This document shows positions 8,201-21,000 of a stretch of DNA of 64,000 nt, piece by piece (positions within the stretch are counted from its first letter, which is position 1; the number at the start of each line of letters is the position of its first letter). The stretch is from positions 124,001-188,000 of IMG/VR virus record IMGVR_UViG_3300020810_001156; one strand, written 5' to 3'. The translations under genes and the position numbers were made by a program. The notes beneath the pieces were generated by a model. It was not told the DNA's origin, did no database searches, and was given only the letters and a program-made list of their open reading frames with translations.

Positions 8201-11200
8201 GAGGATAGTGGTTCAATCGTATTTACAGTTCCTCAATCAGCTCCTGGTACACTTTACTATATTTCTGAAGAATCTTCTTCATTAAGTGGTAGTATTAGAG
8301 TTGCTGATAATCTTAATATAAATGAAAGAATTGCATTTGAAGGTAAGACTGAAGTTAGTGGTAATTTAGATGTATCACAAACTATTATCGCAAATGATGG
8401 TTCTATAACAAACGATTTAATTGTTGGTGATACAACAACTACTGAAAAATTAGTAGCAAATCATATCACAGCATCTTCAATTACCGCATCTTATTTAGAT
8501 TTCATTAATTTTGATAATGGAATTCAGAGTGTAGCTGGTAGATTGAAGTGGAACGAAACCGATGGTACTCTTGATTTAGGAATGAAGGGCAATGAAGCTA
8601 CACTTCAATTAGGACAAGAATTATATTATCCGCCTGTTGTAAACAAAGATGGTAATAATCTAATCAATGGTACTTTAGTAATGGTTGACCCAGCTCAACC
8701 AGCACAAGGTAATAGAATTAGAGTAATAAAATCAGTAACCGATGGAACTTACGCTGAGGATTTATTAGTTGGTATTCTTACCGAACCTATCGATAATAAT
8801 CAAGAAGGATTTGTAACTTGGTTTGGATATGTAAGAGGAGTTCAGATAAACGCATTAGAATCGGGTTCTTTAAAAGATAGTGGTTCAGTTTGGGCAGAGG
8901 GTGATATTCTTTATGGAGACCCTCAAAGACCAGGTGGTTTAACAAATGTTCAACCTGAAGCTCCAAACTTAAAATCATCTATCGCTGTAGTTACTGCTAA
9001 GAATGGTAACAATGTAACATTATTGGTAAGACCTCATTTGGGAGACCACTTATATGATTTACATGATGTACAAATTACTACATCTGATGCTATATTGGTT
9101 GATAGTGGTTCAATTAAATCCGATGATGGTGATTTATTAGTTTGGAATAGTGGTTCTCAAAGATGGGAAAATACAAGAGAAAATTTAGAACTTAGTGGTT
9201 CATTCTCTGGTTCATTTGCTGGTGATGGTTCTCAATTAACCAACATTTCATTAGCAAACTTATCATTTGATGTAAATAGATTAGTAACCGGTTCAGTAAC
9301 GGCATCGGTATCTAACGATGGTAAATTTGTAGTAGAATCTACTGGTTCTGTTAGAACCGAACTTAGTGGTTCGTTATTTGTTTCTGAATCAATAGAAATT
9401 GGTGGTATCTATACTGGTGATGGTTCCGGTCTTACAAATATCTCACTTGCTAACTTAGCATTTGATGTAGCACAAATCGTAACTGGTTCGGTAACTGCAT
9501 CTACAAATGAAGATGGTAGATTCATTGTTGAGGACCCGTTTGGTGGAGTTAAATCTGAGTTTAGTGGTTCGGTTGAAATATCGCAATCCCTAAATGTAGG
9601 TGGTGTAATTAGTGGTGATGGTAGTGGTTTAACAAATATTTCAATCGCTAACTTAGCATTTGATGCTGATAGAATTGCTACGGGTTCTGTAACTGCATCT
9701 ATTGATGAAAGTGGGTTCTTTAGAGTATTCTCTACATCATCTGTAAAATCAGAATTTAGTGGTTCGGTATTTATATCAGAATCAATATCAGCATCTCTAT
9801 TTGTAGGTGATGGTGGTGGATTATTTAACATTCCAGCGGAAGCACTTCAAGACTTAGAATTGGATAGAATCAAATCTGGTTCTGGTGAAGCTGTGATTGA
9901 CCCAAATCAATTAACTGTAAATGTTCCATTATCGGCATCTCTATTCAGAGGTGATGGTGGTGGATTATTCAATATCCCAGCGGAATCGTTGACAGATTTA
10001 GAATTAGATTTAATTACTTCTGGTTCAACATTCGCACAAGTAAGTGATAACAACGGATTTGTAGTATTTGCACCTGAGAGTGGTTCACAATTAACTGGTT
10101 CATTATTCGTAAGTGGGGCAATCTCACTAATTAGTGGTTCATCATTTAGTGGTAGTGGTAGAAATCTATTTGATATTCCAGCGGATGCAATCTTTGATTT
10201 AGACCAAACTAGAATTACTTCTGGTTCGGTAACGGCATCTGTATCACCTGTTCAAGGTTTCGTAGTAAACACTTCGGCATCTATTGAGGGTGATTTGACA
10301 GTTCAAAATGATATTACAGTAAACGATATTACTGCAAACGATATTACCGCAAGTGTATTTAGAGGTGGTTTACTTTCTGGTTCATTTGAGGGAGCATATA
10401 GAGGTGAGGGTGATGCTGAAGATAGAGAAATTCTAATATTTGATGCGGCATCAAACAAATTTGTACCTGTACCTGAATCTACTCCAACTACAACCGAACC
10501 ATTCTCAAATGCTACTGAAGTAACTATTGTTCATAACTTTGATGTAGCATATCCAATAGTACAGGTTTATGAAACTGGTTCAAATGGAATGATTATTCCT
10601 TTAGCTATTGAATCTATTGATAATAATACTGTTAAAGTTAAGTTTAGTGGATTAACAAGTGGACAAATCGTTGTTGGTAGTGGTGGTTCTAAAATTAGTG
10701 GAGCAATAAGTGGTGATAATGTAATAGGAACAGTTAGTTCAGCATCATATGCTATATTCGCTGAAACTGCTGGAACTGCATCTTCGGTAGCTGGATTAGA
10801 TTCAGCATCATTAGCAGCACTACAAGATTTAGAAAACTTTGTAAGAAACGAACAAACGGCATCAATGACCGTTCTTTCTTCTTCATTCGCAATTACAGCA
10901 TCTTACGCTGAAAATGCTGAAGTTAGTGTTGATTTAAGTGAATACATACAAAATAGCCAAACCTCTTCAATGAGTGTGGCTACATCATCATATTCATTAT
11001 TTGCAGTAACCGCTTCATACGCATTAAATGCTGGTGCTGGTGGTGGTGGAACTGATTTATACATATTTGAAACTGGTTCAGTAGTAAATGGATTAGTAGG
11101 AAATATGAACTTTACTGGTTCTGGTGTTAGTGTAACACCTTCTGGTTCAGATGGAGTATTGGTAGAAGTATTAAGTAACTCTACTGGTGATGGATTCCCA

Positions 11201-14200
11201 TTCTCAGGAAAAGCTGAATTAAGTGGTAGTTTAAATGTAACTGGAAGTTTAGTTGTAACTGGTAGTGTATTCTTAGATTTAGAAACTGGTAGTTCCAATG
11301 ATTTAGTAATCTATGATACAACTAATAAAAAATTACAAACTAAGAGTATAGCTGAAGTAGCTGGTACTTCTGGTACAACAGGTACTGCTGGTACATCTGG
11401 TACTGCTGGAACAACTGGTTCATCAGGTACAACTGGTTCTTCTGGTACATCTGGTATAGATGGTACTTCTGGAACATCAGGTACTGATGGAACTTCAGGT
11501 AGTTCTGGTACAACTGGTTCTTCTGGTACAACTGGTTCAGCGGGGACATCTGGTTCTTCTGGAACCTCAGGTTCAGATGGTACTTCTGGTTCTTCTGGAA
11601 CTTCGGGTTCATCTGGTTCAAGTGGAAGTAGTGGTACTACTGGTAGTAGTGGTACAACTGGTTCAGCGGGGACATCTGGTTCTTCTGGAACTTCTGGGAC
11701 AAGTGGAAGTAGTGGTACTTCTGGTTCAACTGGTACTGCTGGAACATCGGGTACTTCTGGGACAAGTGGAAGTAGTGGTTCAAGTGGAACATCTGGTATC
11801 GAAGGTGGTGGAATGTTTGTGGTTAGAAGTAATGGGTTTGTATATAATATAGATGGTACTTCTGGAGATTTCCCAACCCTAACAGTGGTAAGAGGGGAAT
11901 TATTCTACTTTGATGTAAGTAATGTAAGTTCATCGCATCCATTCGCATTGAGATTGGCAGATGGTAATACATCAGCAGTTCCGGGTACTACAAACAATGA
12001 CCCAACAAACGGAAATCATAGTACAAATGTATTAATAAAATATAGAGTACCTGAAAATGCACCTGATAGTATAGTTTATCAATGTGCTATTCATTCATCA
12101 ATGATTGGTACTATTGAGATAGTAGATAAAAATGGTTCTTCTGGTACATCGGCAACTTCTGGTACTTCTGGAACAAGCGGAACATCAGGAACATCAGGTA
12201 CTTCTGGTACTGATGGTTCGACCGGGTCTGCTGGTACATCTGGTACTGCTGGAACAACTGGTTCATCAGGTACAACTGGTTCATTTGGTACATCGGGTAG
12301 TAGTGGAACACGTGGTACATCGGGAACATCTGGTACTGATGGTTCTACTGGTTCAGCGGGTTCTACTGGTTCAGCTGGTTCATCGGGTACAACTGGTTCA
12401 ACAGGTACTTCGGGCTCTTCTGGTTCAAGTGGTACTTCTGGAACTTCAGGTACCGATGGTTCAACTGGTAGTGGGGGTACATCTGGTTCTTCTGGTTCAG
12501 CTGGAACTTCTGGAACAAGTGGTACATCCGGCTCAGCTGGTACATCAGGTACTTCTGGTTCTGCTGGTACATCGGGTAGTAGTGGAAGTAGTGGTTCAAC
12601 TGGTTCAAGTGGTACAACTGGTTCAGAGGGAACTTCAGGTTCTTCGGGTACATCTGGAACTTCTGGTTCATCGGGCTCAAGTGGAAGTAGTGGAAGTAGT
12701 GGTTCGACAGGTTCGGCTGGTACAAGTGGTATAGGTACTGATGGAACTTCGGGTTCTTCTGGTACAAATGGAACATCAGGTAGTAGTGGTACATCTTCAA
12801 CTTCTGGAACTTCGGGTTCAACGGGTTCAAGTGGTACAACTGGTTCTGAAGGAACAAGTGGAACTTCGGGCACATCAGGCACTGCTGGTACTTCTGGTTC
12901 TTCTTCAACTTCTGGTACAAGCGGAAGTAGTGGAACTTCAGCAACTTCTGGAACAAGCGGTACAAGTGGTACAAGTGGAACATCTGGTAGTGATGGTTCG
13001 ACAGGTTCTGCTGGTTCTGCTGGTTCATCGGGTTCATCTGGAACAAGCGGTAGTAGTGGTACAAGTGGGGCACAAGGTACAAGCGGTTCTGCTGGTACAA
13101 GTGGTTCAAGTGGTACATCTGGTGAGCAAGGAACTTCGGGTTCAGCTGGTACGTCTGGTTCTACTGGTTCAGCTGGTACAACAGGTTCTGCTGGTAGTAC
13201 TGGTTCAGCTGGTACTTCTGGAACAAGTGGTACTTCTGGTTCTGATGGTACATCTGGAACGAGTGGCTTAGATGGAACTGCTGGTACAAGTGGTAGTAGT
13301 GGAACTTCAGGTTCAACTGGTTCTGCTGGTACATCTGGAACTTCAGGAACAAATGGAACATCAGGTACTTCTGGTACTGATGGTACATCGGGAACTTCTG
13401 GAACAACAGGTTCAGCTGGTTCATCGGGTACATCAGGTTCATCTGGTGAGAGTGGAAGTAGTGGAACATCTGGTACTGATGGAAGTAGTGGAACTTCCGG
13501 CTCCGATGGAACATCGGGTACAACCGGAACTGCGGGTACGTCTGGTAGTGGAGGAACAACAGGTTCAGCTGGAACTTCTGGAACAAGCGCAACTTCAGGA
13601 ACTTCTGGAACAAGTGGTACATCTGGCTCATCAGGTTCAGCTGGTTCAGCTGGTTCAACTGGAACTGCTGGTAGTGGAGGTACATCAGGTACATCAGCTG
13701 AAGGTAGTAGTGGAACAAGTGGTACAACTGGAACTGGCGGAACAAGTGGTACAACAGGTAGTGGAGGAACTTCTGGAACTTCGGGTTCAGCAGGTTCAAC
13801 TGGAACGGGTGGTACATCAGGTACATCAGCTGAGGGGACTTCAGGTTCAGCGGGTACATCTGGTACAAATGGAACAAGTGGAACTTCAGGTACGGATGGA
13901 ACTTCTGGTTCAACTGGAACTGCTGGTAGTGGTGGTTCTTCTGGTACATCAGCTGAAGGAAGTAGTGGTACATCTGGAACATCTGGAATCAATGGAACAA
14001 GTGGTAGTGCTGGTACATCAGGTTCTTCATCAACTTCTGGAACATCTGGAACGAGTGGTTTAGATGGAACATTCTTTGGTAGTAGTGGAACAAGTGGTAC
14101 GGGCGGTTCAGCTGGTACATCAGGAGCTGGTACTGATGGTTCAGCGGGTACATCAGGTTCTTCTGGAACGAGTGGTTTAGATGGTACTTTCTTTGGTAGT

Positions 14201-15991
14201 AGTGGAACAAGCGGAACTTCAGCAACATCTGGCTCATCTGGTTCATCAGGAACATCTGGTTTAACTGGAACTTCTGGTAGTACAGGTTCATCGGGTACAT
14301 CAGCTGAAGGTACTTCAGGTTCTTCTGGTACAAGTGGTGCTGGGACATCTGGAACATCTGGAATCAATGGAACAAGCGGTTCAACTGGAACTGCTGGTAC
14401 TTCTGGATTAGATGGTACTTTCTTTGGTAGTAGTGGAACAACAGGTACTGGGGGTACTTCTGGTACTTCTGGAGCTGGTACTTCTGGTACTTCTGGTTTT
14501 GATGGTATAAATGGTACAGCTGGCACAAGCGGTGTTGATGGTACATTTTTTGGTACTAGTGGTACAACTGGTACATCAGGTTCTTCTGGTTCGACTGGTA
14601 CATCAGGTACAAGTGGTTTAGGTTCATCGGGTACTTCTGGTTTAGATGGCACTTTCTTCGGTTCAGCAGGTACTTCTGGTACATCTGGTGCTGGTACAAG
14701 CGGAAGTAGTGGTACAACTGGTACTTCGGGTTCTTCTGGTTTAGATGGAACTAACTTTGGTTCAGCTGGTACATCAGGTACTTCTGGTTCAACTGGAACT
14801 TCAGGTTCGGCTGGTACTTCTGGTTCGACTGGTACATCAGGTACAAGTGGTTTAGATGGAACTAACTTTGGTTCATCAGGTACTTCTGGTGTAACTGGTA
14901 CTTCTGGAACAACAGGTACTGATGGTTCATCTGGAACTTCTGGTTCTTCTGGTTTAGATGGTACAAATTTTGGTTCGGCAGGTTCATCAGGTACTTCTGG
15001 TATAACTGGTTCTTCAGGAACATCTGGTTCTGGTACTTCGGGTACTTCTGGATTGGGTACTAATGGTACATCAGGTACATCAGCTGAAGGTAGTAGTGGT
15101 TCTTCGGGTACATCAGGAGCTGGTACAGATGGTTCTGCTGGTAGTACTGGTTCAGCTGGTACTTCTGGAACAAGTGGTACTTCTGGTTTAAATGGAACAT
15201 TCTTCGGAAGTAGTGGTACATCGGCAACTTCTGGAACAACAGGTACTGATGGTTCATCTGGAACTGCTGGTTCTTCTGGTACAAGTGGATTAAATGGAAC
15301 ATTCTTCGGAAGTAGTGGTTCATCGGGTACAACTGGAACTGGTGGTACTTCGGGTGTAAGTGGTTCAGATGGAACATCTGGACTTGGTAGCAGTGGTACA
15401 TCGGGTACTTCTGCGATAGGTTCATCTGGAACTGGTGGTACATCGGGTACTTCTGGAGTTGATGCAACCGGAACCGCTGGTACATCGGGTACTTCTGGAG
15501 CTGGTACTTCTGGTACTTCTGGATTACTTGAGTTAAATGGTGTAACACCAAATGGTGTAATTACCTATAATGGTACTGGAAATGAAGCAACTGTTGAGAG
15601 TAATCTTATTTATGATGGAGTTACATTAGAAGTACCACAAATATCAGGTTCAGTTTATATTGAATCAAAAATCTTTATTGAACTTTATAAAGATTTAGGA
15701 GCTGGTGCCAATGTAACAATCGATTTAGAACAAGGAAATAACTTCGAATATGAAGTAAATAATAACTGTACATTTACATTCTCAAACCCACCAGGAAATC
15801 CAAAAGCATTTGGATTCACATTGGTGATAGAAAATGGTGGAGCATTTACAGTAAGTTGGCCAACTGGAGTATTGTGGGCAAATGGTAACGCACCAACGCT
15901 AACAACATCTGGTAAAGATATCTTAGTATTCTATACTTATGATACGGGAACAACTTATTATGGTTTCCTAAGTGCAGCAAATATGAGTTAA
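2219..15991 (+). CDS. giant fibre protein (4590 aa): ~70-aa SGS repeats, 3 cupredoxin-like domains, Gly-X-Y tract, C-terminal tail-fibre domain
   Basis: Many copies of FSGSG.GLFDIP.SAL...I.SGSVTASV.P..GF; HPF...Y.C..H..M.G motifs; GTS/GSS triplets; C-terminal FTFSNPP...VSWP..V.W..G.APTLT..G.DILVF. Confidence 0.85.
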   Translation: MGQLLSGKVKVTRPQDVSLDRYQYLSLSEAEPNLGVPESGSISSGSFALVASDDAGNRLFVTKIQLEEFSGSFSGSFQGDGSQLTNLPLVEDASRLISGSASASISPQTGFLVNTSGSFDGGLTVDGNGRFTGDLVVDNKIVAREILVEFISSSIFFSSGSNKFGDELTDRQEFTGSVEITGSLTTDGVVEIPFDSAGFFSGSGEGLTNIPRSALTEDALVTNKITSGSVTASVDPQRGFILEDTEGDVKAEFSGSVFVSSSVSASIFSGSGAGLFDIPRSALTEDALVTNKITSGSVTASVSPDEGFKVESLESGSQITGSIKVSGSITLADGESYSGSGANLFDIPLSALSTETLIATSLESGSVTASVSPDEGFKVESLESGSQITGSIRISGSITLSDGETYSGSGADLFDIPRSALTEDALVTNQITSGSVTASVSPQGFFKVESTGSVKTELSGSLFVSGGISGSFFSGSGAGLFDIPLSALAEEVVAATKIQDGNVTASVDEQNGFIVISEASGSQFTGSLFVSGGVTLEDGIYTGDGSGLFNIPISNLAGDSPRIASGSATASVDPEDGFKFFGADRAEFSSSLFVSESIEAKEISGSFSGSGANLFDIPESALSFEISKITSGSVTASVDAEDGFVVTSIASGSTFFGEVRVESGSSYSGSGAKLFDIPVAAIVDLDTSLIFSGSITASTNPEDGFVVTSIESGSTFFGDVKLSSGSVFSGSGRDLFDIPRSALTEDALLSSFIASGSVTASVSPVFGFRLEGTNRAEFSSSVFVESGVSASVFSGSGAGLTDIPESALAFDINKISSGSATASISPNEGFVVNTFSKFEFPVSASMFSGSGAGLFDIPQSALTEEAFRIASGSATASVSPNLGFVVNTSSLFEQDVRIDSDLVVTGRITTNELYTNFISSSIVYSSGSNIFGDSAEDKQTLIGETEIVGNVTASGIISSSFEGDGSRLFNIPLNALSEEAFRIASGSVSASLLYKSGSDEPSLFRVEDTTRKEIRTELSGSLGVSGSLSASMFSGSGEGLFDIPRSALAPDALLSNLIATGSITASLNPNGGMNVNTFTTITGGLFVKAEQTPGQAEVSLIELGDTTRISGSLFISESVTASLFQGDGSGLFNIPAAQLSGDSPRIASGSATASISPNLGFQVNVPATFDSSISASTTIFAKDVEVTDDVTADRFIGNEVSGAFSGSGRDLFDIPRSALTEDALLTNNITSGSITASVIVVPPESGSNIFRVEDSTGTTKSEFSGSVFVSESITSKFFIGDGSQLTNVQAEESPVIASGSATASVESGEFFIVNAGSGSQFTSSIDITGSVVISNDLTASKINVDELDATIITSEEFTGSFSGSFAGDGSQLNNIPFTSLSGDAPRIGSGSVTASTDPDRGFVVESLDSGSLFTGSLFVSGNVQINDGIFKGDGAGLFNIPQSALAEDSPRIASGSVTASVSPNLGFVVNTSGSIQGDLTIDNDLYVSGAINARELNVTFIDSVVITSSGSNTFGNSLDNRQEFTGSVFVTNSLDVDGVITGDGSGLFNIPQSALTEEAFRIASGSVSASVTPERGFFVESTESGSEFTGSVKISGSLDVNEGFKVGTDITASEGTVSASFFVGDGSQLTNLPAAEFAEEAKRIASGSATASISPNLGFVVNTTTNLEDDVRITGSFIVSSSNGFVDTGSINTTFNVINEGSSAYRFSGGVVGDNPTITIVRGLTYTFNVNAPSHPFYIKTQNSDGTEFEYSGSVITNNGTENGTITWIVSGSAPNTLYYNCENHLAMAGEFNIVDEIPLYGQIDLIGDTEVVGNLNITGSTFVTGNLDVSNTITANEVSASKFLGDFSGSFSGSGRDLFNIPLSALAEDVLPRSFIASGSVTASVSPNNGFEVNSSASIEGNLKVIGDTFVTGGLVISSSITEVEAVSQSFYITFNADSSSYLVDSVEEPTLTLVRGIEYTFNVNTPNYNFYLKTNNTTGSGDLFSTGVTNNGEDSGSIVFTVPQSAPGTLYYISEESSSLSGSIRVADNLNINERIAFEGKTEVSGNLDVSQTIIANDGSITNDLIVGDTTTTEKLVANHITASSITASYLDFINFDNGIQSVAGRLKWNETDGTLDLGMKGNEATLQLGQELYYPPVVNKDGNNLINGTLVMVDPAQPAQGNRIRVIKSVTDGTYAEDLLVGILTEPIDNNQEGFVTWFGYVRGVQINALESGSLKDSGSVWAEGDILYGDPQRPGGLTNVQPEAPNLKSSIAVVTAKNGNNVTLLVRPHLGDHLYDLHDVQITTSDAILVDSGSIKSDDGDLLVWNSGSQRWENTRENLELSGSFSGSFAGDGSQLTNISLANLSFDVNRLVTGSVTASVSNDGKFVVESTGSVRTELSGSLFVSESIEIGGIYTGDGSGLTNISLANLAFDVAQIVTGSVTASTNEDGRFIVEDPFGGVKSEFSGSVEISQSLNVGGVISGDGSGLTNISIANLAFDADRIATGSVTASIDESGFFRVFSTSSVKSEFSGSVFISESISASLFVGDGGGLFNIPAEALQDLELDRIKSGSGEAVIDPNQLTVNVPLSASLFRGDGGGLFNIPAESLTDLELDLITSGSTFAQVSDNNGFVVFAPESGSQLTGSLFVSGAISLISGSSFSGSGRNLFDIPADAIFDLDQTRITSGSVTASVSPVQGFVVNTSASIEGDLTVQNDITVNDITANDITASVFRGGLLSGSFEGAYRGEGDAEDREILIFDAASNKFVPVPESTPTTTEPFSNATEVTIVHNFDVAYPIVQVYETGSNGMIIPLAIESIDNNTVKVKFSGLTSGQIVVGSGGSKISGAISGDNVIGTVSSASYAIFAETAGTASSVAGLDSASLAALQDLENFVRNEQTASMTVLSSSFAITASYAENAEVSVDLSEYIQNSQTSSMSVATSSYSLFAVTASYALNAGAGGGGTDLYIFETGSVVNGLVGNMNFTGSGVSVTPSGSDGVLVEVLSNSTGDGFPFSGKAELSGSLNVTGSLVVTGSVFLDLETGSSNDLVIYDTTNKKLQTKSIAEVAGTSGTTGTAGTSGTAGTTGSSGTTGSSGTSGIDGTSGTSGTDGTSGSSGTTGSSGTTGSAGTSGSSGTSGSDGTSGSSGTSGSSGSSGSSGTTGSSGTTGSAGTSGSSGTSGTSGSSGTSGSTGTAGTSGTSGTSGSSGSSGTSGIEGGGMFVVRSNGFVYNIDGTSGDFPTLTVVRGELFYFDVSNVSSSHPFALRLADGNTSAVPGTTNNDPTNGNHSTNVLIKYRVPENAPDSIVYQCAIHSSMIGTIEIVDKNGSSGTSATSGTSGTSGTSGTSGTSGTDGSTGSAGTSGTAGTTGSSGTTGSFGTSGSSGTRGTSGTSGTDGSTGSAGSTGSAGSSGTTGSTGTSGSSGSSGTSGTSGTDGSTGSGGTSGSSGSAGTSGTSGTSGSAGTSGTSGSAGTSGSSGSSGSTGSSGTTGSEGTSGSSGTSGTSGSSGSSGSSGSSGSTGSAGTSGIGTDGTSGSSGTNGTSGSSGTSSTSGTSGSTGSSGTTGSEGTSGTSGTSGTAGTSGSSSTSGTSGSSGTSATSGTSGTSGTSGTSGSDGSTGSAGSAGSSGSSGTSGSSGTSGAQGTSGSAGTSGSSGTSGEQGTSGSAGTSGSTGSAGTTGSAGSTGSAGTSGTSGTSGSDGTSGTSGLDGTAGTSGSSGTSGSTGSAGTSGTSGTNGTSGTSGTDGTSGTSGTTGSAGSSGTSGSSGESGSSGTSGTDGSSGTSGSDGTSGTTGTAGTSGSGGTTGSAGTSGTSATSGTSGTSGTSGSSGSAGSAGSTGTAGSGGTSGTSAEGSSGTSGTTGTGGTSGTTGSGGTSGTSGSAGSTGTGGTSGTSAEGTSGSAGTSGTNGTSGTSGTDGTSGSTGTAGSGGSSGTSAEGSSGTSGTSGINGTSGSAGTSGSSSTSGTSGTSGLDGTFFGSSGTSGTGGSAGTSGAGTDGSAGTSGSSGTSGLDGTFFGSSGTSGTSATSGSSGSSGTSGLTGTSGSTGSSGTSAEGTSGSSGTSGAGTSGTSGINGTSGSTGTAGTSGLDGTFFGSSGTTGTGGTSGTSGAGTSGTSGFDGINGTAGTSGVDGTFFGTSGTTGTSGSSGSTGTSGTSGLGSSGTSGLDGTFFGSAGTSGTSGAGTSGSSGTTGTSGSSGLDGTNFGSAGTSGTSGSTGTSGSAGTSGSTGTSGTSGLDGTNFGSSGTSGVTGTSGTTGTDGSSGTSGSSGLDGTNFGSAGSSGTSGITGSSGTSGSGTSGTSGLGTNGTSGTSAEGSSGSSGTSGAGTDGSAGSTGSAGTSGTSGTSGLNGTFFGSSGTSATSGTTGTDGSSGTAGSSGTSGLNGTFFGSSGSSGTTGTGGTSGVSGSDGTSGLGSSGTSGTSAIGSSGTGGTSGTSGVDATGTAGTSGTSGAGTSGTSGLLELNGVTPNGVITYNGTGNEATVESNLIYDGVTLEVPQISGSVYIESKIFIELYKDLGAGANVTIDLEQGNNFEYEVNNNCTFTFSNPPGNPKAFGFTLVIENGGAFTVSWPTGVLWANGNAPTLTTSGKDILVFYTYDTGTTYYGFLSAANMS
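11363..15520 (+). repeat. Gly-X-Y (GTS/GSS/GSA/GTT) coding repeat, interrupted by a globular domain at ~11810-12130
   Basis: 9-nt periodic GGN-(A/T)CN-(TCN/AGY) pattern, visible in the translation. Confidence 0.95.
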
Positions 15992-16007
15992 CAAATAGTT
16001 ATATAAA

Positions 16008-16889
16008 ATGGGAATAGCAAGAAGATTAACAAGTGTAACAGGAGGAGAATTGGAATCATTTATTTTTAGAATAGTAACAACTTCGGCAAATCAAACATAT
16101 GAATTGCCTATCGCCGATTATGGGAGTAATACACCTAATTTTACAGTAAATTGGGATGATGGTACTGATAATGTAATACAATCTTCATCTGATGTGAATA
16201 AATTACATACTTTTAGTTCAGCCGGTACTTATGATATTGAATTAAATGGAACTGTACCTTCTTTTAAGGTAGATAACAATTCCTTATATAGAAGTTTATA
16301 TACAGCGGTTATTTCTTGGGGTCAATGCTCATTTAGAACTATAAACTTTCATGGTTGTAATAATTTAACATCATTACCAACTACTGATTTTGAAGGATTA
16401 AGTACTATATTTAATTTGGATAACTTTTTAAGAAGTAGTGGTATAACAACACTACCAACTGGTTTATTAGATTATATGGTAAATGTAACATCTTTGGTAG
16501 ATAGTTTTTCGTTTATGCAAATATCATCAATTCCAAGTGGATTTTTTGATAGTTGTACTCAAATAACATCATTCAACTCCACATTTAACCAATGTTTTAG
16601 TTTAAGTGCTATTCCATCTGGGTTATTTGATAATAATACAAATGTAACCAACTTTTCATCAACATTTAAAAGTTGTACATCAATTGGTTCAATCCCAACG
16701 GGATTATTCGATAATTGCACATCAGTTACAACATTTTTCTCAGTATTTAGAATGCCAACAACTTCTAATTCATTAGTTGGAAATGCTCCAGAACTTTGGA
16801 CTAGAAATCCAGTTCCGTTGGGATTATATGCATTTAGAAATGCAACGGGATTAAGTAATTACGCATCAATACCAGCAAATTGGAAATAA
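16008..16889 (+). CDS. BspA/LRR_5-type leucine-rich-repeat protein, putative fibre-tip adhesin
   Basis: Repeats IPSGLFDNNTNVTNFSSTFKSCTSI; PKD-like N-terminus (VNWDDG...HTFSSAGTYDI); lies directly after the fibre gene. Confidence 0.7.
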   Translation: MGIARRLTSVTGGELESFIFRIVTTSANQTYELPIADYGSNTPNFTVNWDDGTDNVIQSSSDVNKLHTFSSAGTYDIELNGTVPSFKVDNNSLYRSLYTAVISWGQCSFRTINFHGCNNLTSLPTTDFEGLSTIFNLDNFLRSSGITTLPTGLLDYMVNVTSLVDSFSFMQISSIPSGFFDSCTQITSFNSTFNQCFSLSAIPSGLFDNNTNVTNFSSTFKSCTSIGSIPTGLFDNCTSVTTFFSVFRMPTTSNSLVGNAPELWTRNPVPLGLYAFRNATGLSNYASIPANWK

Positions 16890-16901
16890 AAATATAAAGT
16901 T

Positions 16902-17360
16902 ATGTATATAAAAGTAAGCGGTTCAGAAATAACATATCCATACACCTTAGATAATTTAAGGAATGATAATACTAATGTTAGTTTTCCAAAAAACTTAACA
17001 AATGATATATTGGCATCTTTTCACACATATCCAATAATATATGTGGCTGTTGATATTGATTCCGATTATGAAAAAAATTATGTTGAAGGTACTCCAATTC
17101 AAAGCGGTTCTGTTTATGTTCAGAATTGGATAACTTCTTCGGCATCTGTTGAAGAAATTGCACAAAGAAAAGAAGAAAAGTGGACAGAAATTAGAGAAAT
17201 ACGAAATAATTTATTAAGTGAATGTGATTGGACACAAATGAATGATACTCCAATTAGTGGTTCTAAATTAACTGAATGGCAAACATACAGACAATCATTA
17301 AGAGATATTACATCCCAATCAAATCCATTTGAAATAACTTGGCCCACTAAGCCGGAGTAG
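16902..17360 (+). CDS. tail fibre assembly chaperone-like protein
   Basis: C-terminal W..IR..RN.LL.ECDWTQ..D...WQTYRQSLRDI...WPTKP signature. Confidence 0.8.
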   Translation: MYIKVSGSEITYPYTLDNLRNDNTNVSFPKNLTNDILASFHTYPIIYVAVDIDSDYEKNYVEGTPIQSGSVYVQNWITSSASVEEIAQRKEEKWTEIREIRNNLLSECDWTQMNDTPISGSKLTEWQTYRQSLRDITSQSNPFEITWPTKPE

Positions 17361-17408
17361 TAAACAAAAATTAGTTATATTTATACCTATAACCAATGGA
17401 TTAGATAA

Positions 17409-17726
17409 ATGAGAATAGATTCACCCATTTTTTCAGGTTCGATTGAACAATCGTTATCAGCATACGCTGATTTAAGTGGTTCGTTTACTGGTTCCTTTAC
17501 TGGTTCCTTTACTGGAGATATATCGGTAACTGAAGCAGAGTTTGATAGATTGATTGTAAACGATACAATTACAATTGGTGAAGAAAATACAAGTGGTACG
17601 TCTGTAATTGTTTCTCAATCCATTCAAGTTAGTGGTTCTGTTAACATTGGACCTGATGATTCGTTCAATGTTGATGGAGTAAATGTTTTAGATTCAGCAA
17701 TCGCTTTTGCAATTGCTTTGGGATAA
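17409..17726 (+). CDS. small virion connector protein
   Basis: SGSFTGSFTGSFTG repeat; C-terminal AIAFAIALG typical of small phage fibre connectors. Confidence 0.55.
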   Translation: MRIDSPIFSGSIEQSLSAYADLSGSFTGSFTGSFTGDISVTEAEFDRLIVNDTITIGEENTSGTSVIVSQSIQVSGSVNIGPDDSFNVDGVNVLDSAIAFAIALG

Positions 17727-17737
17727 AGGAATAAAAT

Positions 17738-18070
17738 ATGGCAAATACATTTAAAAATAGTATTAAAGGACCCGCTGGAACAGGCGGTTTATCAGTTTAT
17801 ACCTGTCCTGCTGCAACTTCGGCAACTGTGATTGGTGTAAATGTGGCAAATATAGTATCACAAAATATTAATGTAGATGTTCAGATAACTGATAACTCTG
17901 CATCGGTAACTAAATATTTATTAAAAGGTGCTGTAATTCCACAAGGTTCTTCAACAATATTGGTTGGTGGGGAGCAAAAAGTAGTATTAGAAGCAAACGA
18001 TTCAATAACTGTAACATCTTCGGTGAATTCATCGGCAGATGTTGTAGTATCAGTATTAGAAATTACATAA
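17738..18070 (+). CDS. small virion adaptor protein (~110 aa beta-sandwich)
   Basis: MANTFK...VYT.P...KVVLE.ND...DVVVSVLEIT family; precedes the giant fibre. Confidence 0.65.
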   Translation: MANTFKNSIKGPAGTGGLSVYTCPAATSATVIGVNVANIVSQNINVDVQITDNSASVTKYLLKGAVIPQGSSTILVGGEQKVVLEANDSITVTSSVNSSADVVVSVLEIT

Positions 18071-18081
18071 AGTAATAATGT

Positions 18082-21000
18082 ATGAGCTATAAAGGTATAG
18101 ACCCAAATGGTATAAATCAGATTTCACAATCCTTAGTTTCACTTTATGTGAATGGGGAAAGGCAAATTGATATATCTACTGAAAATGTTGATATAATCAA
18201 TGACCTTAATGTTCAAGGTAGTGTATCTGCATCCATATTTAGTGGTAGTGGTGAGGAATTATTTAACATACCACCAACGGCTCTTACAACCGATGCTCAA
18301 AATCAAATATTTAGTGGTTCCGCAACAGCATCAATTTCACCTAATAAGGGATTTAAAGTAAATGTAGATACATCTATTAGTGGTGCATTAAATGTATCCG
18401 AATCTTTAACTGTTGGTGGAGTAATTAGTGGTGATGGTAGTGGAATTACAAATATTAATGCGGATTCCATTGGTGATATTGATAAATTAAAATCAGGTTC
18501 AGCTGAAGCTGTGATTTCACCAAATTTAGGATTTGAAATTAATGTAGATACTGAAATAAGTGGTACATTAGATATTAGTGGTTCGTTAAGAACAGATGAT
18601 ACTTTAAAAGTAGATAAATCTGCGGATATTGGTACTGATTTAGATGTTGGTAACAATGTAACAATAGGAAATGATTTAACGGTAGCAGGTAAAATTACTT
18701 CTACCGAACTTCATACAACATACTTATCATCTTCAGTAGTTTATGCTACTGGTTCAAACAAATTTGGTGATGGTGCTTCTGATAAGCAAGAGTTCACTGG
18801 TTCGGTTGGTATAAAGGGTGATTTAAGTGTTGATGGTAATATAGATTTTAGTGGAAACTTAACTGCAGATGATTTACCAACAGGTACTTCTTCTGAAGTT
18901 GTAGTTTTCGATACAACAACAGGTACATTCCAAAGAAAGTTTAACGCATCATCTTCTGGTACATCAGGTACCTCTGGTTCATCAGGTTCATCTGGTTCTG
19001 GTGGTACATCTGGTTCTGGTGGTACTTCGGGAACTTCGGGTTCTGGTGGTTCTTCTGGAACAAGCGGAAGTGGTGGTTCATCTGGAACATCTGGTTCTGG
19101 TGGTTCAAGTGGTACAAGCGGAAGTGGAGGTTCTTCTGGTACATCTGGTAGTGGAGGAACATCTGGTAGTGGAGGTTCATCTGGAACATCTGGTTCTGGT
19201 GGAACAAGTGGAACTTCTGGAAGTGGAGGTAGTTCAGGTACATCCGGCTCTGGTGGCTCAAGCGGTACATCAGGTAGTGGTGGTTCATCTGGAACAACTG
19301 GTTCATCAGGTACATCTGGTAGTGGTGGAACAAGTGGAGAAGATGGTACAAGTGGTACGGGAGGTTCTTCTGGTACAGGAGGTTCTTCTGGTACGGGAGG
19401 TTCAGCTGGTACATCGGGTAGTGCTGGTACTTCAGCAACTGCTGGAACGGCTGGTACATCGGGTTCAAGTGGTTCGAGTGGTACAACTGGTTCTGCTGGT
19501 ACATCAGGTTCTGGTGGAACAAGTGGTACATCAGGTAGTGGTGGTTCATCAGGAACTTCAGCATCTTCTGGTACGGGTGGTACATCGGGTAGTGGAGGAA
19601 CAAGTGGAACTTCTGGAAGTGGAGGTTCATCTGGAACAAGTGGTAGTGCAGGTTCAACGGGTTCAGCTGGTTCAAGTGGAACTGGTGGTTCTTCTGGTAG
19701 TGGTGGAAGTTCTGGGACAGCAGGAAGTGGAGGTTCGTCTGGAACAAGTGGTTCTGGTGGTACTTCTGGTACAACAGGTTCATCTGGGACAGGAGGTTCA
19801 GCAGGTACATCTGGAAGTGGGGGAACATCCGGCTCTGGTGGAACAAGTGGTAGTGGAGGTTCATCTGGAACATCAGGTAGTGGTGGTTCGAGTGGTATAA
19901 CTGGAGCAGGTGGTTCAGCTGGTACAAGTGGTAGTGGAGGAACTTCAGGTTCTTCGGGTACATCTGGTGATGATGGTACAAGTGGTAGTGGGGGAACATC
20001 TGGTTCGGGTGGTTCGTCTGGTACTTCAGCATCTTCTGGTACTGGTGGTACAGCTGGTACTTCTGGTAGTGGTGGTTCATCTGGTACAAGCGGTTCGGGT
20101 GGTACATCAGGTACTTCTGCAACCTCTGGTAGTGGTGGTTCTGCTGGTACTTCTGGCAGTGGTGGTTCTTCTGGAACATCTGGTAGTGGTGGTTCATCTG
20201 GTACAAGTGGTGAACAAGGAACTTCAGGTAGTGATGGTACATCTGGTAGTGGAGGAACATCTGGTAGTGGTGGAACTTCGGGCTCTGGTGGTTCAAGTGG
20301 TACAAGCGGTTCGGGTGGTACATCTGCAACTGCTGGTAGTGGGGGTACTTCTGGTAGCGGAGGTAGTTCGGGTACATCTGGTAGTGGAGGTTCTTCGGGA
20401 ACTGCTGGTAGCGGAGGTAGTTCGGGTACATCTGGTAGTGGAGGTTCTTCGGGAACTGCTGGTAGTGGAGGAACTTCGGGTTCTGGGGGTTCATCTGGAA
20501 CAAGCGGAAGTGGAGGAACTTCAGGTTCTGCTGGTTCTTCTGGAACACTTTCTCTAACTGGCAATACTGATAATGGTGTAATTACACTTAATGGTTCAGC
20601 ACCAAATGCAACTGTTGAATCAAATCTTACTTTTGATGGTACAACTCTTAATGTACAAGGTAACTTAACAGTAACAGGTACAACAACAACTGTTAATACT
20701 GAAACCATTAATTTAGCAGATAATATTATACTTCTTAACTCAAATGAGACTGGTACTCCTTCACAAAATGCTGGTATTGAGATTGAAAGAGGAACTGCTT
20801 CTAACAAACAATTTATTTGGAACGAATCTTCTGATAGATGGGTAGCCGATTCAAACTTACAAACTTCTGGTAATTTATATTCAACAGGTGGACAATTATT
20901 CTTAAATGAAACTGCTGGTGCAATAACCAAAATTACTAATGAAAATAATCTATCAATTTATTCAGACCACTTAGTAAACTTCTTAGAGAGTGATGCGAGT

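What the first reader, a model, noticed from the sequence alone, without database searches (positions are those of the whole stretch)
11363..20545. Very long proline-free Gly-X-Y tracts with shared flanking caps in both giant fibres
Seen: about 1270 aa (fibre 1) and 530 aa (fibre 2) of Gly-X-Y made almost entirely of Ser/Thr/Gly/Ala, without Pro. Synonymous codons are heavily scrambled, pointing to protein-level selection rather than recent slippage. Both tracts have homologous caps: DLETGSSNDLVIYDTT vs DLPTGTSSEVVVFDTT before, and NGVIT.NG...ATVESNL.(Y/F)DG after. Inference: either a collagen-like helix (~360 and ~150 nm at 0.286 nm/residue) that may need Ser/Thr glycosylation for stability, or a polyglycine-II bundle. 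The caps would be folding or trimerisation nuclei.
Basis: partly seen in the sequence, partly recalled or inferred. Interest (0 to 1): 0.6.

Follow-up and report, generated by a model that had tools for sequence, protein, structure and literature searches.

The report
Proline-free collagen-like shafts in phage fibres
Two giant tail-fibre genes of an uncultured 253-kb phage carry very long glycine-every-third-residue stretches made only of Gly, Ser, Thr and Ala. These are most likely thin three-chain collagen-type shafts that lack every sequence feature known to stabilise collagen, and they belong to a large, unstudied family of phage fibres.

Summary
Fibre 1 (2219-15991, 4590 aa) has 1265 aa of Gly-X-Y and fibre 2 (18082-29682, 3866 aa) has 531 aa. 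Neither tract has any Pro or Lys, and charge is almost absent. In fibre 2 all 177 triplets share one register, with five Gly-to-Ala changes.

Codons are as scrambled as in the rest of the genes. Orthologues differ synonymously at 33% of Gly codons, yet the Gly residue changes in under 1%, so the period is selected at protein level. Both flanking caps are homologous between the fibres.

New points:
- Fibre 1's tract is split by a cupredoxin-fold domain that keeps copper ligands.
- Its last third has stereotyped breaks.
- The C-side cap is nearly invariant and abuts such tracts (31-568 aa) in at least 78 IMG/VR loci. It models as a trimer. It is a general fibre joint also found without tracts.
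- N-side caps are of three kinds.
- The genome carries a glycosyltransferase cluster.

Best reading (about 0.6): parallel homotrimeric collagen-like shafts nucleated at the C-cap. The fold itself is not shown, because the model was not confident about the tract.

Phage collagen and a Pro-free (Gly-Ala-Ser)n helix (Bucl8) are already known, so this is a new variant of a known kind.

The parts
2219..15991 (+). Fibre 1 gene (4590 aa, P0001). It has about 28 copies of a 65-70 aa repeat, two cupredoxin-like domains, then N-cap, tract, C-cap and tip.
11174..11362 (+). Fibre 1 N-side cap (aa 2986-3048)
   Evidence: BLASTP against the fibre 2 N-side cap: 39% identity over 72 aa, E 1e-8
11363..11812 (+). 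Fibre 1 tract A: 50 uninterrupted Gly-X-Y triplets with no Pro
   Evidence: best Pfam Collagen stretch
11813..12160 (+). Cupredoxin-fold domain inserted in the tract (aa 3199-3314), with His, Cys, His and Met ligands kept
   Evidence: AF2 pLDDT 96; Foldseek matches to laccase domains, cupredoxins and plastocyanin; ligand columns nearly invariant; phrog_677 E 1.6e-17
12161..13588 (+). Fibre 1 tract B (aa 3315-3790): long runs of 64 and 71 triplets, a few Gly-to-Ala/Ser replacements and one 1-residue deletion
13589..15505 (+). Fibre 1 tract C (aa 3791-4429): Gly-X-Y runs of 4-14 triplets separated by stereotyped breaks. These include a Phe-Phe insertion after Gly-Leu-Asp-Gly-Thr, an Ala-Glu break and Gly-Ala-Gly.
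   Evidence: the same pattern appears in relative L085
15506..15634 (+). Fibre 1 C-side cap (aa 4430-4472)
   Evidence: 64% identity over 39 aa to the fibre 2 cap, E 1e-10
15635..15991 (+). Fibre 1 C-terminal tip domain, probably receptor-binding
   Evidence: phrog_7760, phrog_9017 and other tail fibre PHROGs; tips of Roseobacter, Microcystis and Synechococcus phage fibres
16902..17360 (+). Tail fibre assembly chaperone gene between the two fibres
   Evidence: Pfam Phage_tail_APC E 1.2e-18 and Caudo_TAP
18082..29682 (+). Fibre 2 gene (3866 aa, P0002)
18754..18957 (+). Fibre 2 N-side cap (aa 225-292)
   Evidence: the same cap type occurs in 16 distinct relatives
18958..20550 (+). Fibre 2 tract (aa 293-823): 177 triplets in one register, five Gly-to-Ala changes, no Pro, and Gly at Y in 30% of triplets
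20551..20655 (+). Fibre 2 C-side cap (aa 824-858)
   Evidence: nearly invariant in 78 IMG/VR loci
20542..20934 (+). Region with confident inter-chain contacts in the three-copy model (aa 821-951)
   Evidence: complex prediction: ipSAE 0.89, best control 0.00
29257..29439 (+). Intramolecular chaperone (Peptidase_S74) at the end of fibre 2
   Evidence: Pfam E 1e-8, 35.8 bits

Best explanation
The tracts are the shafts of two homotrimeric tail fibres of a jumbo myovirus. Three parallel chains, each in an extended polyproline-II-like conformation, pack around the Gly positions as in collagen.

The nearly invariant cap that starts directly after the last triplet forms an intertwined trimer. It sets the chain register, and the helix zips from it toward the N terminus. 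This zipping is inferred.

The helix has no Pro and no salt bridges. Its stability must therefore come from its length, from clamping at both ends, from Ser/Thr hydroxyls and water, and possibly from O-glycosylation by the phage's own glycosyltransferases. All of this is inferred.

In fibre 1 the shaft is distal. It carries a trio of cupredoxin domains as a knob and ends in a receptor-binding tip. Its last third has regular Leu/Phe-containing breaks that could act as staples or hinges.

Scrambled codons keep the DNA from slipping or recombining, while tract length still varies between relatives.
For: Period and register:
- Gly sits at every third residue over 50-71 triplet runs in fibre 1 and over 177 triplets in one register in fibre 2.
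- In 55 distinct relatives' tracts, most of those with 120-189 triplets show no register slip. The 37 Gly replacements are all Ala or Ser.

Selection:
- Orthologues show 0-0.8% change at Gly against 19-28% at X and Y, with 33% synonymous differences at Gly codons.
- Fibre-2 indels are all multiples of 3 aa.
- Positional bias is strong. X is Thr or Ser, and Y is Ser far more often than Gly, Ala or Asp. Thr is 16-fold commoner at X than at Y.

Family and context:
- Pfam Collagen hits fibre 1 at E 1e-106.
- The C-cap abuts the tract within 0-1 residue in 78 loci.
- The three-copy model scored ipSAE 0.89 with a best control of 0.00, at least 67% contact agreement between runs, and partner pLDDT of at least 71. 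The calibration for this mark was 21 of 30 solved pairs against 0 of 23 single chains.
- The fibre context is clear: an S74 chaperone, an adjacent tail-fibre assembly chaperone, a tail-fibre tip domain, and the sheath gene downstream.

Interchangeability with ordinary collagen-like tracts:
- The same cupredoxin domain, and a short sequence like the second N-side cap type, flank ordinary Pro-rich Gly-X-Y tracts in other phage fibres (L143, L148).

Precedent:
- Pro-free, uncharged (Gly-Ala-Ser)n of Bucl8 gives a triple-helix CD signal at 25 C (PMC7682875).
- Phage collagen with a C-terminal trimerisation cap is known from EPclA (PMC3368898).
Against: - The trimer model gave confident contacts only from aa 821 on. 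The 57 tract residues included were not confidently placed.
- The tracts lack every stabiliser described for collagen-like helices, namely Pro/Hyp and Lys-Gly-Asp or Lys-Gly-Glu salt bridges. Gly in the Y position, seen in 30% of fibre-2 triplets, is treated as an interruption by PMC11923368.
- (Gly-Pro-Thr)10 is a random coil unless it is glycosylated (quoted in PMC11923368).
- Thr lies at X here, not at Y as in the known glycosylated-Thr collagens.
- Fibre 2 falls just under the Pfam Collagen cut-off (26.5 against 27.2 bits).
- The alignments behind favour Gly-Gly pairing by construction.
- No virion image or protein data exist for this phage.
Confidence: 0.6

Rival explanations
1. The tracts are flexible, non-helical Ser/Thr-rich tethers. 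They may be heavily O-glycosylated like mucin linkers, and they simply space the fibre parts. The three-residue period would then be a legacy of 9-nt repeat expansion.
For: - The composition is typical of O-glycosylated linkers.
- A glycosyltransferase cluster lies in the genome.
- The model gave no confident contacts in the tract.
- No known triple-helix stabilisers are present.
- Tract length varies widely between relatives, from 31 to 568 aa.
Against: - A tether needs no Gly at every third residue. Yet Gly is kept in more than 99% of triplets across 55 diverged tracts, and orthologues keep it despite 33% synonymous change.
- Single-base Gly-to-Ser or Gly-to-Ala changes would not alter the composition, but they are almost absent.
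- Strict X/Y preferences and indels in whole triplets also point to a fold.
- Codons are at equilibrium, so the period is old and maintained.
Confidence: 0.2
2. The tracts form polyglycine-II-type bundles, as in snow-flea antifreeze protein or the phage S16 gp38 adhesin. Short PPII segments would fold back and stack in sheets, within or between chains, giving a shorter and thicker rod or a flat surface.
For: - Gly content is 42% in fibre 2, with Gly at Y in 30% of triplets, which is close to Gly-rich PPII bundles.
- Fibre 1 tract C has breaks every 12-40 residues that could serve as turns.
- Such a bundle exists in a phage tail-fibre adhesin (PMC12227593).
Against: - Fibre 2 and fibre 1 tracts A and B have runs of 150-213 residues with no break or turn signal.
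- Only one face of each strand is Gly in most triplets, which suits a three-strand core rather than a multi-neighbour lattice (inference).
- The fibre-1 and fibre-2 N-side caps are homologous to each other, as are the C-side caps. The C-side cap models as a trimer. This favours parallel, extended chains.
Confidence: 0.12
3. The tracts are an assembly or slippage artefact, or decaying low-complexity sequence with no role.
For: The sequences come from a metagenome-assembled, repetitive region. Many stop-free alternative frames overlap it.
Against: - An independent metagenome contig reproduces 5001 nt with 2 mismatches and no gaps.
- The frames stay open over 13.8 and 11.6 kb.
- At least 345 related stretches exist in IMG/VR.
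- Purifying selection acts on Gly.
Confidence: 0.02

Closest known systems
Prophage collagen-like tail-fibre proteins of E. coli O157:H7 (EPclA; PMC3368898) and 'bacteriophage collagen' (Smith et al. 1998, cited in PMC1079782)
   Same: - A Gly-X-Y tract inside a phage side or tail fibre.
- A homotrimer.
- A non-collagen C-terminal domain that trimerises and renucleates the helix.
- A modular domain make-up.
   Different: - EPclA's tract is short, rich in Pro at X and about 22% charged.
- The tracts here have no Pro, almost no charge, and are 5-15 times longer.
- The caps are unrelated in sequence to PfN, PCoil and PfC. No Pfam or PDB match was found.
Bucl8 (Gly-Ala-Ser)n collagen-like domain of Burkholderia (PMC7682875)
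   Same: - Pro-free, uncharged Gly-X-Y made of small residues with Ser at Y.
- The repeat number varies between strains.
- It is anchored to a trimeric domain.
- CD is consistent with a weak triple helix.
   Different: - Bucl8 has 6-38 identical triplets on an outer-membrane efflux protein.
- Here there are 177 to about 420 triplets (at least 639 in relative L087) with mixed Thr/Ser/Gly/Ala triplets, scrambled codons, embedded domains and stereotyped breaks, all in a virus fibre.
Cyanophage P-SSM2 orf028-type Gly-X-Y fibre candidates (PMC1079782)
   Same: - A large marine or freshwater T4-like myovirus.
- A fibre-gene candidate in which nearly half the protein is Gly-X-Y, with Ser and Thr common.
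   Different: That paper lists Pro among the common X/Y residues. Homology to the window's fibres was not tested here.
Thr-glycosylated collagens: BclA of Bacillus exosporium and vent-worm cuticle collagen (as cited in PMC11923368)
   Same: Hydroxyl-bearing residues replace hydroxyproline, and glycosylation is the proposed stabiliser.
   Different: Those carry Thr at the Y position, usually after Pro (Gly-Pro-Thr). Here Thr is at X, Ser is at Y and there is no Pro. Glycosylation is untested.
Polyglycine-II / PPII helical bundles (snow-flea antifreeze protein; phage S16 gp38 adhesin; PMC12227593)
   Same: Gly-rich tripeptide periodicity and PPII strands packed through Gly faces. One example sits in a phage fibre tip.
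   Different: Those are compact domains of 6-14 short strands joined by turns. These tracts run for hundreds of residues without turns and lie between a trimer-forming C-side cap and an N-side cap of untested oligomeric state.

Membership tests
Collagen-like triple-helix repeat proteins (Pfam PF01391 / IPR008160) | Gly at every third residue over 6 or more contiguous triplets | tested here: met
   Runs reach 71 triplets in fibre 1. Fibre 2 has 177 triplets in one register.
Collagen-like triple-helix repeat proteins (Pfam PF01391 / IPR008160) | Score over the Pfam Collagen gathering cut-off (27.2 bits) | tested here: inconclusive
   Fibre 1 scores 349 bits (met). Fibre 2 scores 26.5 bits as a protein, but 30.4 bits when neighbouring hits in the frame are summed.
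Collagen-like triple-helix repeat proteins (Pfam PF01391 / IPR008160) | Sequence-encoded stabilisers: Pro/Hyp at X/Y, or Lys-Gly-Asp/Glu salt bridges | tested here: not met
   Both tracts have 0 Pro, 0 Lys, 1 Arg and 1-3% Asp+Glu. The family-wide figures are Pro 0.2% and Lys 0.1%.
Collagen-like triple-helix repeat proteins (Pfam PF01391 / IPR008160) | Homotrimer with an adjacent trimerisation or nucleation domain | tested here: met
   This rests on prediction only. The three-copy model scored ipSAE 0.89 with a best control of 0.00, with contacts at aa 821-951.
Collagen-like triple-helix repeat proteins (Pfam PF01391 / IPR008160) | Triple-helical conformation (CD maximum near 220 nm, cooperative melting, 0.29 nm rise per residue) | not testable with these tools
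   The model was not confident about the tract residues 764-820.
Phage tail fibres | Fibre hallmarks: a C-terminal intramolecular chaperone, an adjacent assembly chaperone, a tip domain shared with annotated fibres, and a position in the tail gene block | tested here: met
   Peptidase_S74 lies in fibre 2. A Phage_tail_APC ORF sits at 16902-17360. Tail-fibre PHROGs match the fibre 1 tip. The sheath gene is at 30406-32715.
Polyglycine-II / PPII bundle domains | Short PPII segments of about 8-12 residues joined by turns | tested here: not met
   Unbroken runs of 150-213 residues occur in fibre 2 and in fibre 1 tracts A and B. Fibre 1 tract C, with breaks every 12-40 residues, is inconclusive.
Thr-glycosylated collagens (BclA type) | Thr at the Y position carrying O-glycans | tested here: not met
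   Thr is at X (2782 at X against 173 at Y). Glycans cannot be tested. Glycosyltransferase genes are present in the genome.
Cupredoxins (for the domain inserted in the fibre 1 tract) | Greek-key beta-sandwich with His, Cys, His and Met type-1 copper ligands | tested here: met
   AF2 gives pLDDT 96. Foldseek matches laccase domains, purple cupredoxin, plastocyanin and amicyanin at probability 0.98-1.0. H42, C91, H94 and M97 are nearly invariant in 19 sequences. Copper binding itself is untested.

The most novel reading that the evidence does not exclude
These tracts may form a stable three-chain helix hundreds of nanometres long with no proline, no hydroxyproline and no salt bridges. It would be held by a so-far undescribed principle. 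Candidates are a Ser/Thr hydroxyl-water network with Thr fixed at X, O-glycans added by the phage's own enzymes, and periodic Leu/Phe staples. That would be a third way to build collagen. The fibres would carry copper-binding cupredoxin knobs of unknown role.
Probability: 0.3. Interest if true: 0.75.

Novelty: new variant of a known kind. Interest (0 to 1): 0.52.

Why it matters
Current accounts explain the stability of collagen-like helices by imino acids, salt-bridge clamps or glycosylated Thr at Y. Here a large natural family of virus fibres keeps a strict Gly period over up to 190 triplets (more than 600 in one relative) with none of these in the sequence.

If the tracts are helical, they would define the minimal sequence needed for a triple helix. 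They would also be a natural test of what Ser/Thr, glycans and end clamps contribute, and a source of neutral, protease-poor, length-tunable rods for materials work.

For phage biology, the tracts would imply fibres of roughly 150 and 360 nm on a jumbo myovirus from an uncultured lineage. These would act as long, thin search lines for dilute hosts. The cupredoxin domains embedded in the shaft have no known role in any virion.

Tried and rejected
Searches that found nothing useful:
- Megablast of 9000-21000 against cultured phages found no match.
- A word search for giant proteins sharing fibre 2's N-side cap found none.
- A word search with the C-cap region returned 66 giant proteins. None has a Gly-X-Y tract. 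Most match only the module downstream of the cap. Five protein clusters (nine of the proteins held, counting cluster members) carry a cap-like joint without a tract. These proteins are therefore not tract relatives, but they show the cap is a general joint.
- PDB sequence searches for both caps and the tip gave nothing below E 0.07.
- Pfam found nothing for the caps.

Ideas rejected:
- I guessed that the N-side cap is a second copy of the same joint module as the C-side cap. hhalign probabilities were 3.4% and 3.6%, so I rejected this.
- Microcystis phage Mel-JY01 is the nearest cultured relative (sheath 46%, PolB 52%). Its large ORFs next to the sheath have no Gly-X-Y.
- Phage C48C1's hit is to the downstream module only.

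Inconclusive or superseded:
- I checked five relatives' records for glycosyltransferase genes. Two of five have GT2, but four of the five records are 44-67% complete (G004 is 95%) and there is no control set, so the result is inconclusive.
- The single-sequence AF2 model of the insert was poor (pLDDT 55) and was replaced by the alignment-based model.
- The trimer model gave no verdict on the tract itself.

Not run:
- The reads tools, because an independent contig already confirmed the assembly.

Full report
**Setting.** The window is bases 124001-188000 of a 252.6-kb IMG/VR virus record rated complete. It encodes a tail sheath, RecA, DnaB, ribonucleotide reductase and a family B polymerase. 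The nearest cultured relative is Microcystis phage Mel-JY01, with 46% identity in the sheath and 52% in PolB. The source is therefore an uncultured jumbo myovirus distantly allied to T4-like cyanophages.

Two giant ORFs lie just upstream of the sheath gene: 2219-15991 (4590 aa, P0001) and 18082-29682 (3866 aa, P0002). They are fibres:
- P0002 ends in a Peptidase_S74 intramolecular chaperone.
- A Phage_tail_APC assembly chaperone gene lies between them at 16902-17360.
- The last 110 aa of P0001 match tail-fibre tip families.

**The observation.** In P0001, Gly-X-Y runs from aa 3049 to 3198 (50 perfect triplets) and from 3315 to 4429, which is 1265 aa in all. In P0002 it runs from aa 293 to 823 (531 aa). 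Neither tract has a single Pro or Lys. Gly, Ser, Thr and Ala make up 89-98% of them.

Fibre 2 is the cleanest case. All 177 triplets are in one register, and the only departures are five triplets whose Gly is Ala.

Positions are not equivalent. X is Thr or Ser. Y is Ser far more often than Gly, Ala, Asp or Thr. Gly-Thr-Ser outnumbers Gly-Ser-Thr 148 to 22 in fibre 1 and 60 to 1 in fibre 2.

Codon use for Gly, Ser, Thr and Ala has the same entropy inside and outside the tracts. One 9-aa unit that recurs 19 times in fibre 2 is spelled 18 ways. Tandem Repeats Finder sees only 57-87% matching units.

The long ORFs on the minus strand and in other plus frames over the tracts are by-products of a stop-free repeat. 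A contig from another metagenome (L081) matches 5001 nt of the fibre 1 tract with two mismatches and no gap, so the assembly is sound.

There are three points.
- The stated range also covers the end of fibre 1, four small ORFs and the start of fibre 2.
- Fibre 1's tract is split by a 116-aa globular insert. With an alignment of 19 relatives, AF2 models it at pLDDT 96. Foldseek places it among cupredoxins, including laccase domains, a purple cupredoxin, plastocyanin and amicyanin. The type-1 copper ligands His, Cys, His and Met (spaced Cys-x2-His-x2-Met) are nearly invariant. In more than 40 IMG/VR relatives this domain is likewise embedded between Gly-X-Y stretches.
- The last 640 aa of fibre 1's tract are not smooth. 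Runs of 4-14 triplets are separated by a few recurring breaks. One is a one-residue insertion after Gly-Leu-Asp-Gly-Thr-Phe. Others are two-residue breaks such as Ala-Glu, and one-residue deletions such as Gly-Ala-Gly. These shift the register by +1 and -1. In a distant relative (L085) the +1 (Phe) and -1 (Ser-Ser) breaks alternate almost perfectly, so this architecture is conserved.

**Selection.** I compared the window's tracts with orthologues that are 75-83% identical in DNA.
- Gly positions show 0-0.8% amino-acid change but 33% synonymous differences.
- X and Y positions change in 19-28% of cases.
- All fibre 2 indels are multiples of three residues.

These alignments favour Gly-Gly pairing by construction. 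The alignment-free count says the same, however. In 55 distinct relatives' tracts (about 17,000 residues), most have no register slip at all over 120-189 triplets. The 37 Gly replacements are all Ala or Ser. Pro is 0.2% and Lys 0.1%.

A linker selected only for composition would tolerate single-base Gly-to-Ser or Gly-to-Ala changes. These are almost absent. The period is therefore maintained by selection on the protein.

**The caps.** Both caps are homologous between the two fibres (E 1e-8 and 1e-10).

The C-side cap is the constant partner. A scan of IMG/VR found at least 345 related stretches. In the 78 loci fetched, every locus whose sequence reaches upstream of the match (76 of 78) has a Pro-poor Gly/Ser/Thr tract of 31-568 aa. 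The tract ends within 0-1 residue of a nearly invariant cap.

A three-copy model of P0002 aa 764-960 scored ipSAE 0.89 against a best control of 0.00. The runs agreed in at least 67% of contacts, and the partner's pLDDT was at least 71. This mark was reached by 21 of 30 solved pairs and 0 of 23 single chains in the tool's calibration, which used two copies rather than three. Confident contacts span aa 821-951, that is, the cap and what follows.

The cap is not specific to these tracts. Its profile matches, at hhalign probability 96% and E 1.3e-9, a joint module found in giant fibres that have no Gly-X-Y at all.

The N side is variable. Relatives use at least three unrelated sequences, and tract length tracks the type, with medians of 496, 408 and 106 aa. 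My guess that the N-cap is another copy of the joint module was not supported.

**Which fold.** The evidence favours three parallel chains packed on their Gly faces, as in collagen:
- strict period three;
- whole-triplet indels;
- only Ala or Ser tolerated in place of Gly;
- a trimer-forming domain directly at the C-terminal end;
- the fibre context.

There is also evidence of interchangeability. In other phage fibres (L143, L148) the same cupredoxin domain, and a short sequence like the second N-cap type, flank ordinary Pro-rich Gly-X-Y tracts (E 2e-4 for a single short comparison).

Precedents exist:
- phage collagen (Smith 1998, cited in PMC1079782);
- EPclA, with a C-terminal trimerising cap that renucleates the helix (PMC3368898);
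- above all Bucl8, whose Pro-free, uncharged (Gly-Ala-Ser)19 gives a weak triple-helix CD signal at 25 C that is lost at 50 C (PMC7682875).

Against this, the model did not place the tract residues with confidence. The sequence also lacks every described stabiliser. A recent survey of 58,000 collagen-like domains finds salt-bridge triplets to be the shared clamp, treats Gly at X or Y as an interruption, and recalls that (Gly-Pro-Thr)10 folds only when glycosylated (PMC11923368). Fibre 2 has Gly at Y in 30% of its triplets.

The Thr-at-X rule is the reverse of the known glycosylated-Thr collagens. From memory of host-guest scales, it is also not what intrinsic propensity would choose. I leave it unexplained.

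**Rivals.**
- A disordered or mucin-like tether explains the composition and the silent model, but not the conserved Gly period.
- A back-folded polyglycine-II bundle (snow-flea antifreeze protein, phage S16 gp38; PMC12227593) could fit the much-interrupted tract C of fibre 1. It does not fit 150-213-residue runs without a turn.
- An artefact is excluded.

**Glycosylation.** Starting about 4.5 kb past the window's end, the genome carries a cluster holding a GT4, three GT2s, UDP-GlcNAc 2-epimerase, a DegT aminotransferase, FkbM and SAM methyltransferases and a HAD-nucleotidyltransferase. This shows capacity but not a target. It could equally modify the host surface. A look at five relatives' records was inconclusive.

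**Mechanism proposed, with status.**
- Shown: the period, its conservation, cap homology and cap adjacency.
- Predicted: the C-cap trimer.
- Inferred: the C-cap sets the register, and the helix zips C to N.
- Inferred: the shafts would measure about 152 nm in fibre 2, and about 43 plus 319 nm in fibre 1, at 0.286 nm per residue.
- Inferred: fibre 1's shaft is distal and presents the tip, with three cupredoxin domains as a knob. Fibre 2's shaft is proximal.
- Inferred: the Leu/Phe breaks act as hydrophobic staples or hinges.
- Inferred: scrambled codons suppress slippage.

**Verdict.** The kind (phage collagen-like fibre) is known and a Pro-free helix has one precedent, so this is a new variant. 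It is notable for its extreme length, for the complete lack of known stabilisers, for the size of the uncharacterised family, and for the embedded cupredoxin domains.

Noticed in passing
window 11813-12160; also P0001 aa 1693-1798 (window 7295-7612) and aa 1929-2032 (window 8003-8314): There are three cupredoxin-fold domains in fibre 1. Two keep the His/Cys/His/Met copper ligand set and one has lost it. The same domain is embedded in Gly-X-Y tracts of more than 40 IMG/VR relatives, and it ends small Pro-rich collagen-like fibres in L143 and L148. A copper protein in a virion fibre has no obvious role.
   Followed up: partly
G000:C1:192536-207967 (4.5-20 kb past the window end; locus L151 4536-19967): A glycan gene cluster holds a GT4, three GT2s, UDP-GlcNAc 2-epimerase, a DegT aminotransferase fragment, FkbM and SAM methyltransferases, and a HAD-nucleotidyltransferase fusion. 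A further GT1-family ORF of 731 aa lies at G000:C1:85576.
   Followed up: partly
window 2459-10300 (P0001 aa 81-2700): Fibre 1 has at least 28 copies of a 65-70 aa repeat, marked by Leu-Phe-Asp-Ile-Pro and Ser-Gly-Ser-Val-Thr-Ala-Ser motifs. These presumably form a beaded beta-structured shaft ahead of the Gly-X-Y part.
   Followed up: no
window 13589-15505; locus L085: Stereotyped breaks in the Gly-X-Y tract alternate a +1 shift (an extra Phe) with a -1 shift (a two-residue break). This restores the register every 11-13 triplets. The alternation is almost perfect in the distant relative L085.
   Followed up: partly
loci L085 and L087 (IMG/VR): Relatives of fibre 1 reach further extremes. L085 has one uninterrupted run of 216 triplets. 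L087 has a tract of at least 2003 aa (639 triplets) that is cut off by the contig end.
   Followed up: partly
window 20656-20934 (P0002 aa 859-951): The module after the C-cap, with Ile-Ile-Leu-Leu-Asn and Gly-Ile-Glu-Ile-Glu-Arg-Gly motifs, is shared with fibres of Synechococcus, Roseobacter, Salinibacter and Bacillus phages. It is also shared with many giant metagenomic proteins, some of which carry Pfam Mtd_N (PF18454).
   Followed up: partly
G000:C1:188411-189628 (L151 411-1628): An ORF of 405 aa matches Pfam DruA (Druantia defence protein A) at E 6e-22. It lies in a phage genome, next to a clamp-loader-like AAA ATPase and a PD-(D/E)XK nuclease.
   Followed up: no
window 12091-14652 (-), 18741-20930 (-), and several + frame ORFs of 130-300 aa over the tracts: Long open frames overlap the tracts on both strands. 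They follow from the stop-free nine-base repeat and should not be called as genes.
   Followed up: yes
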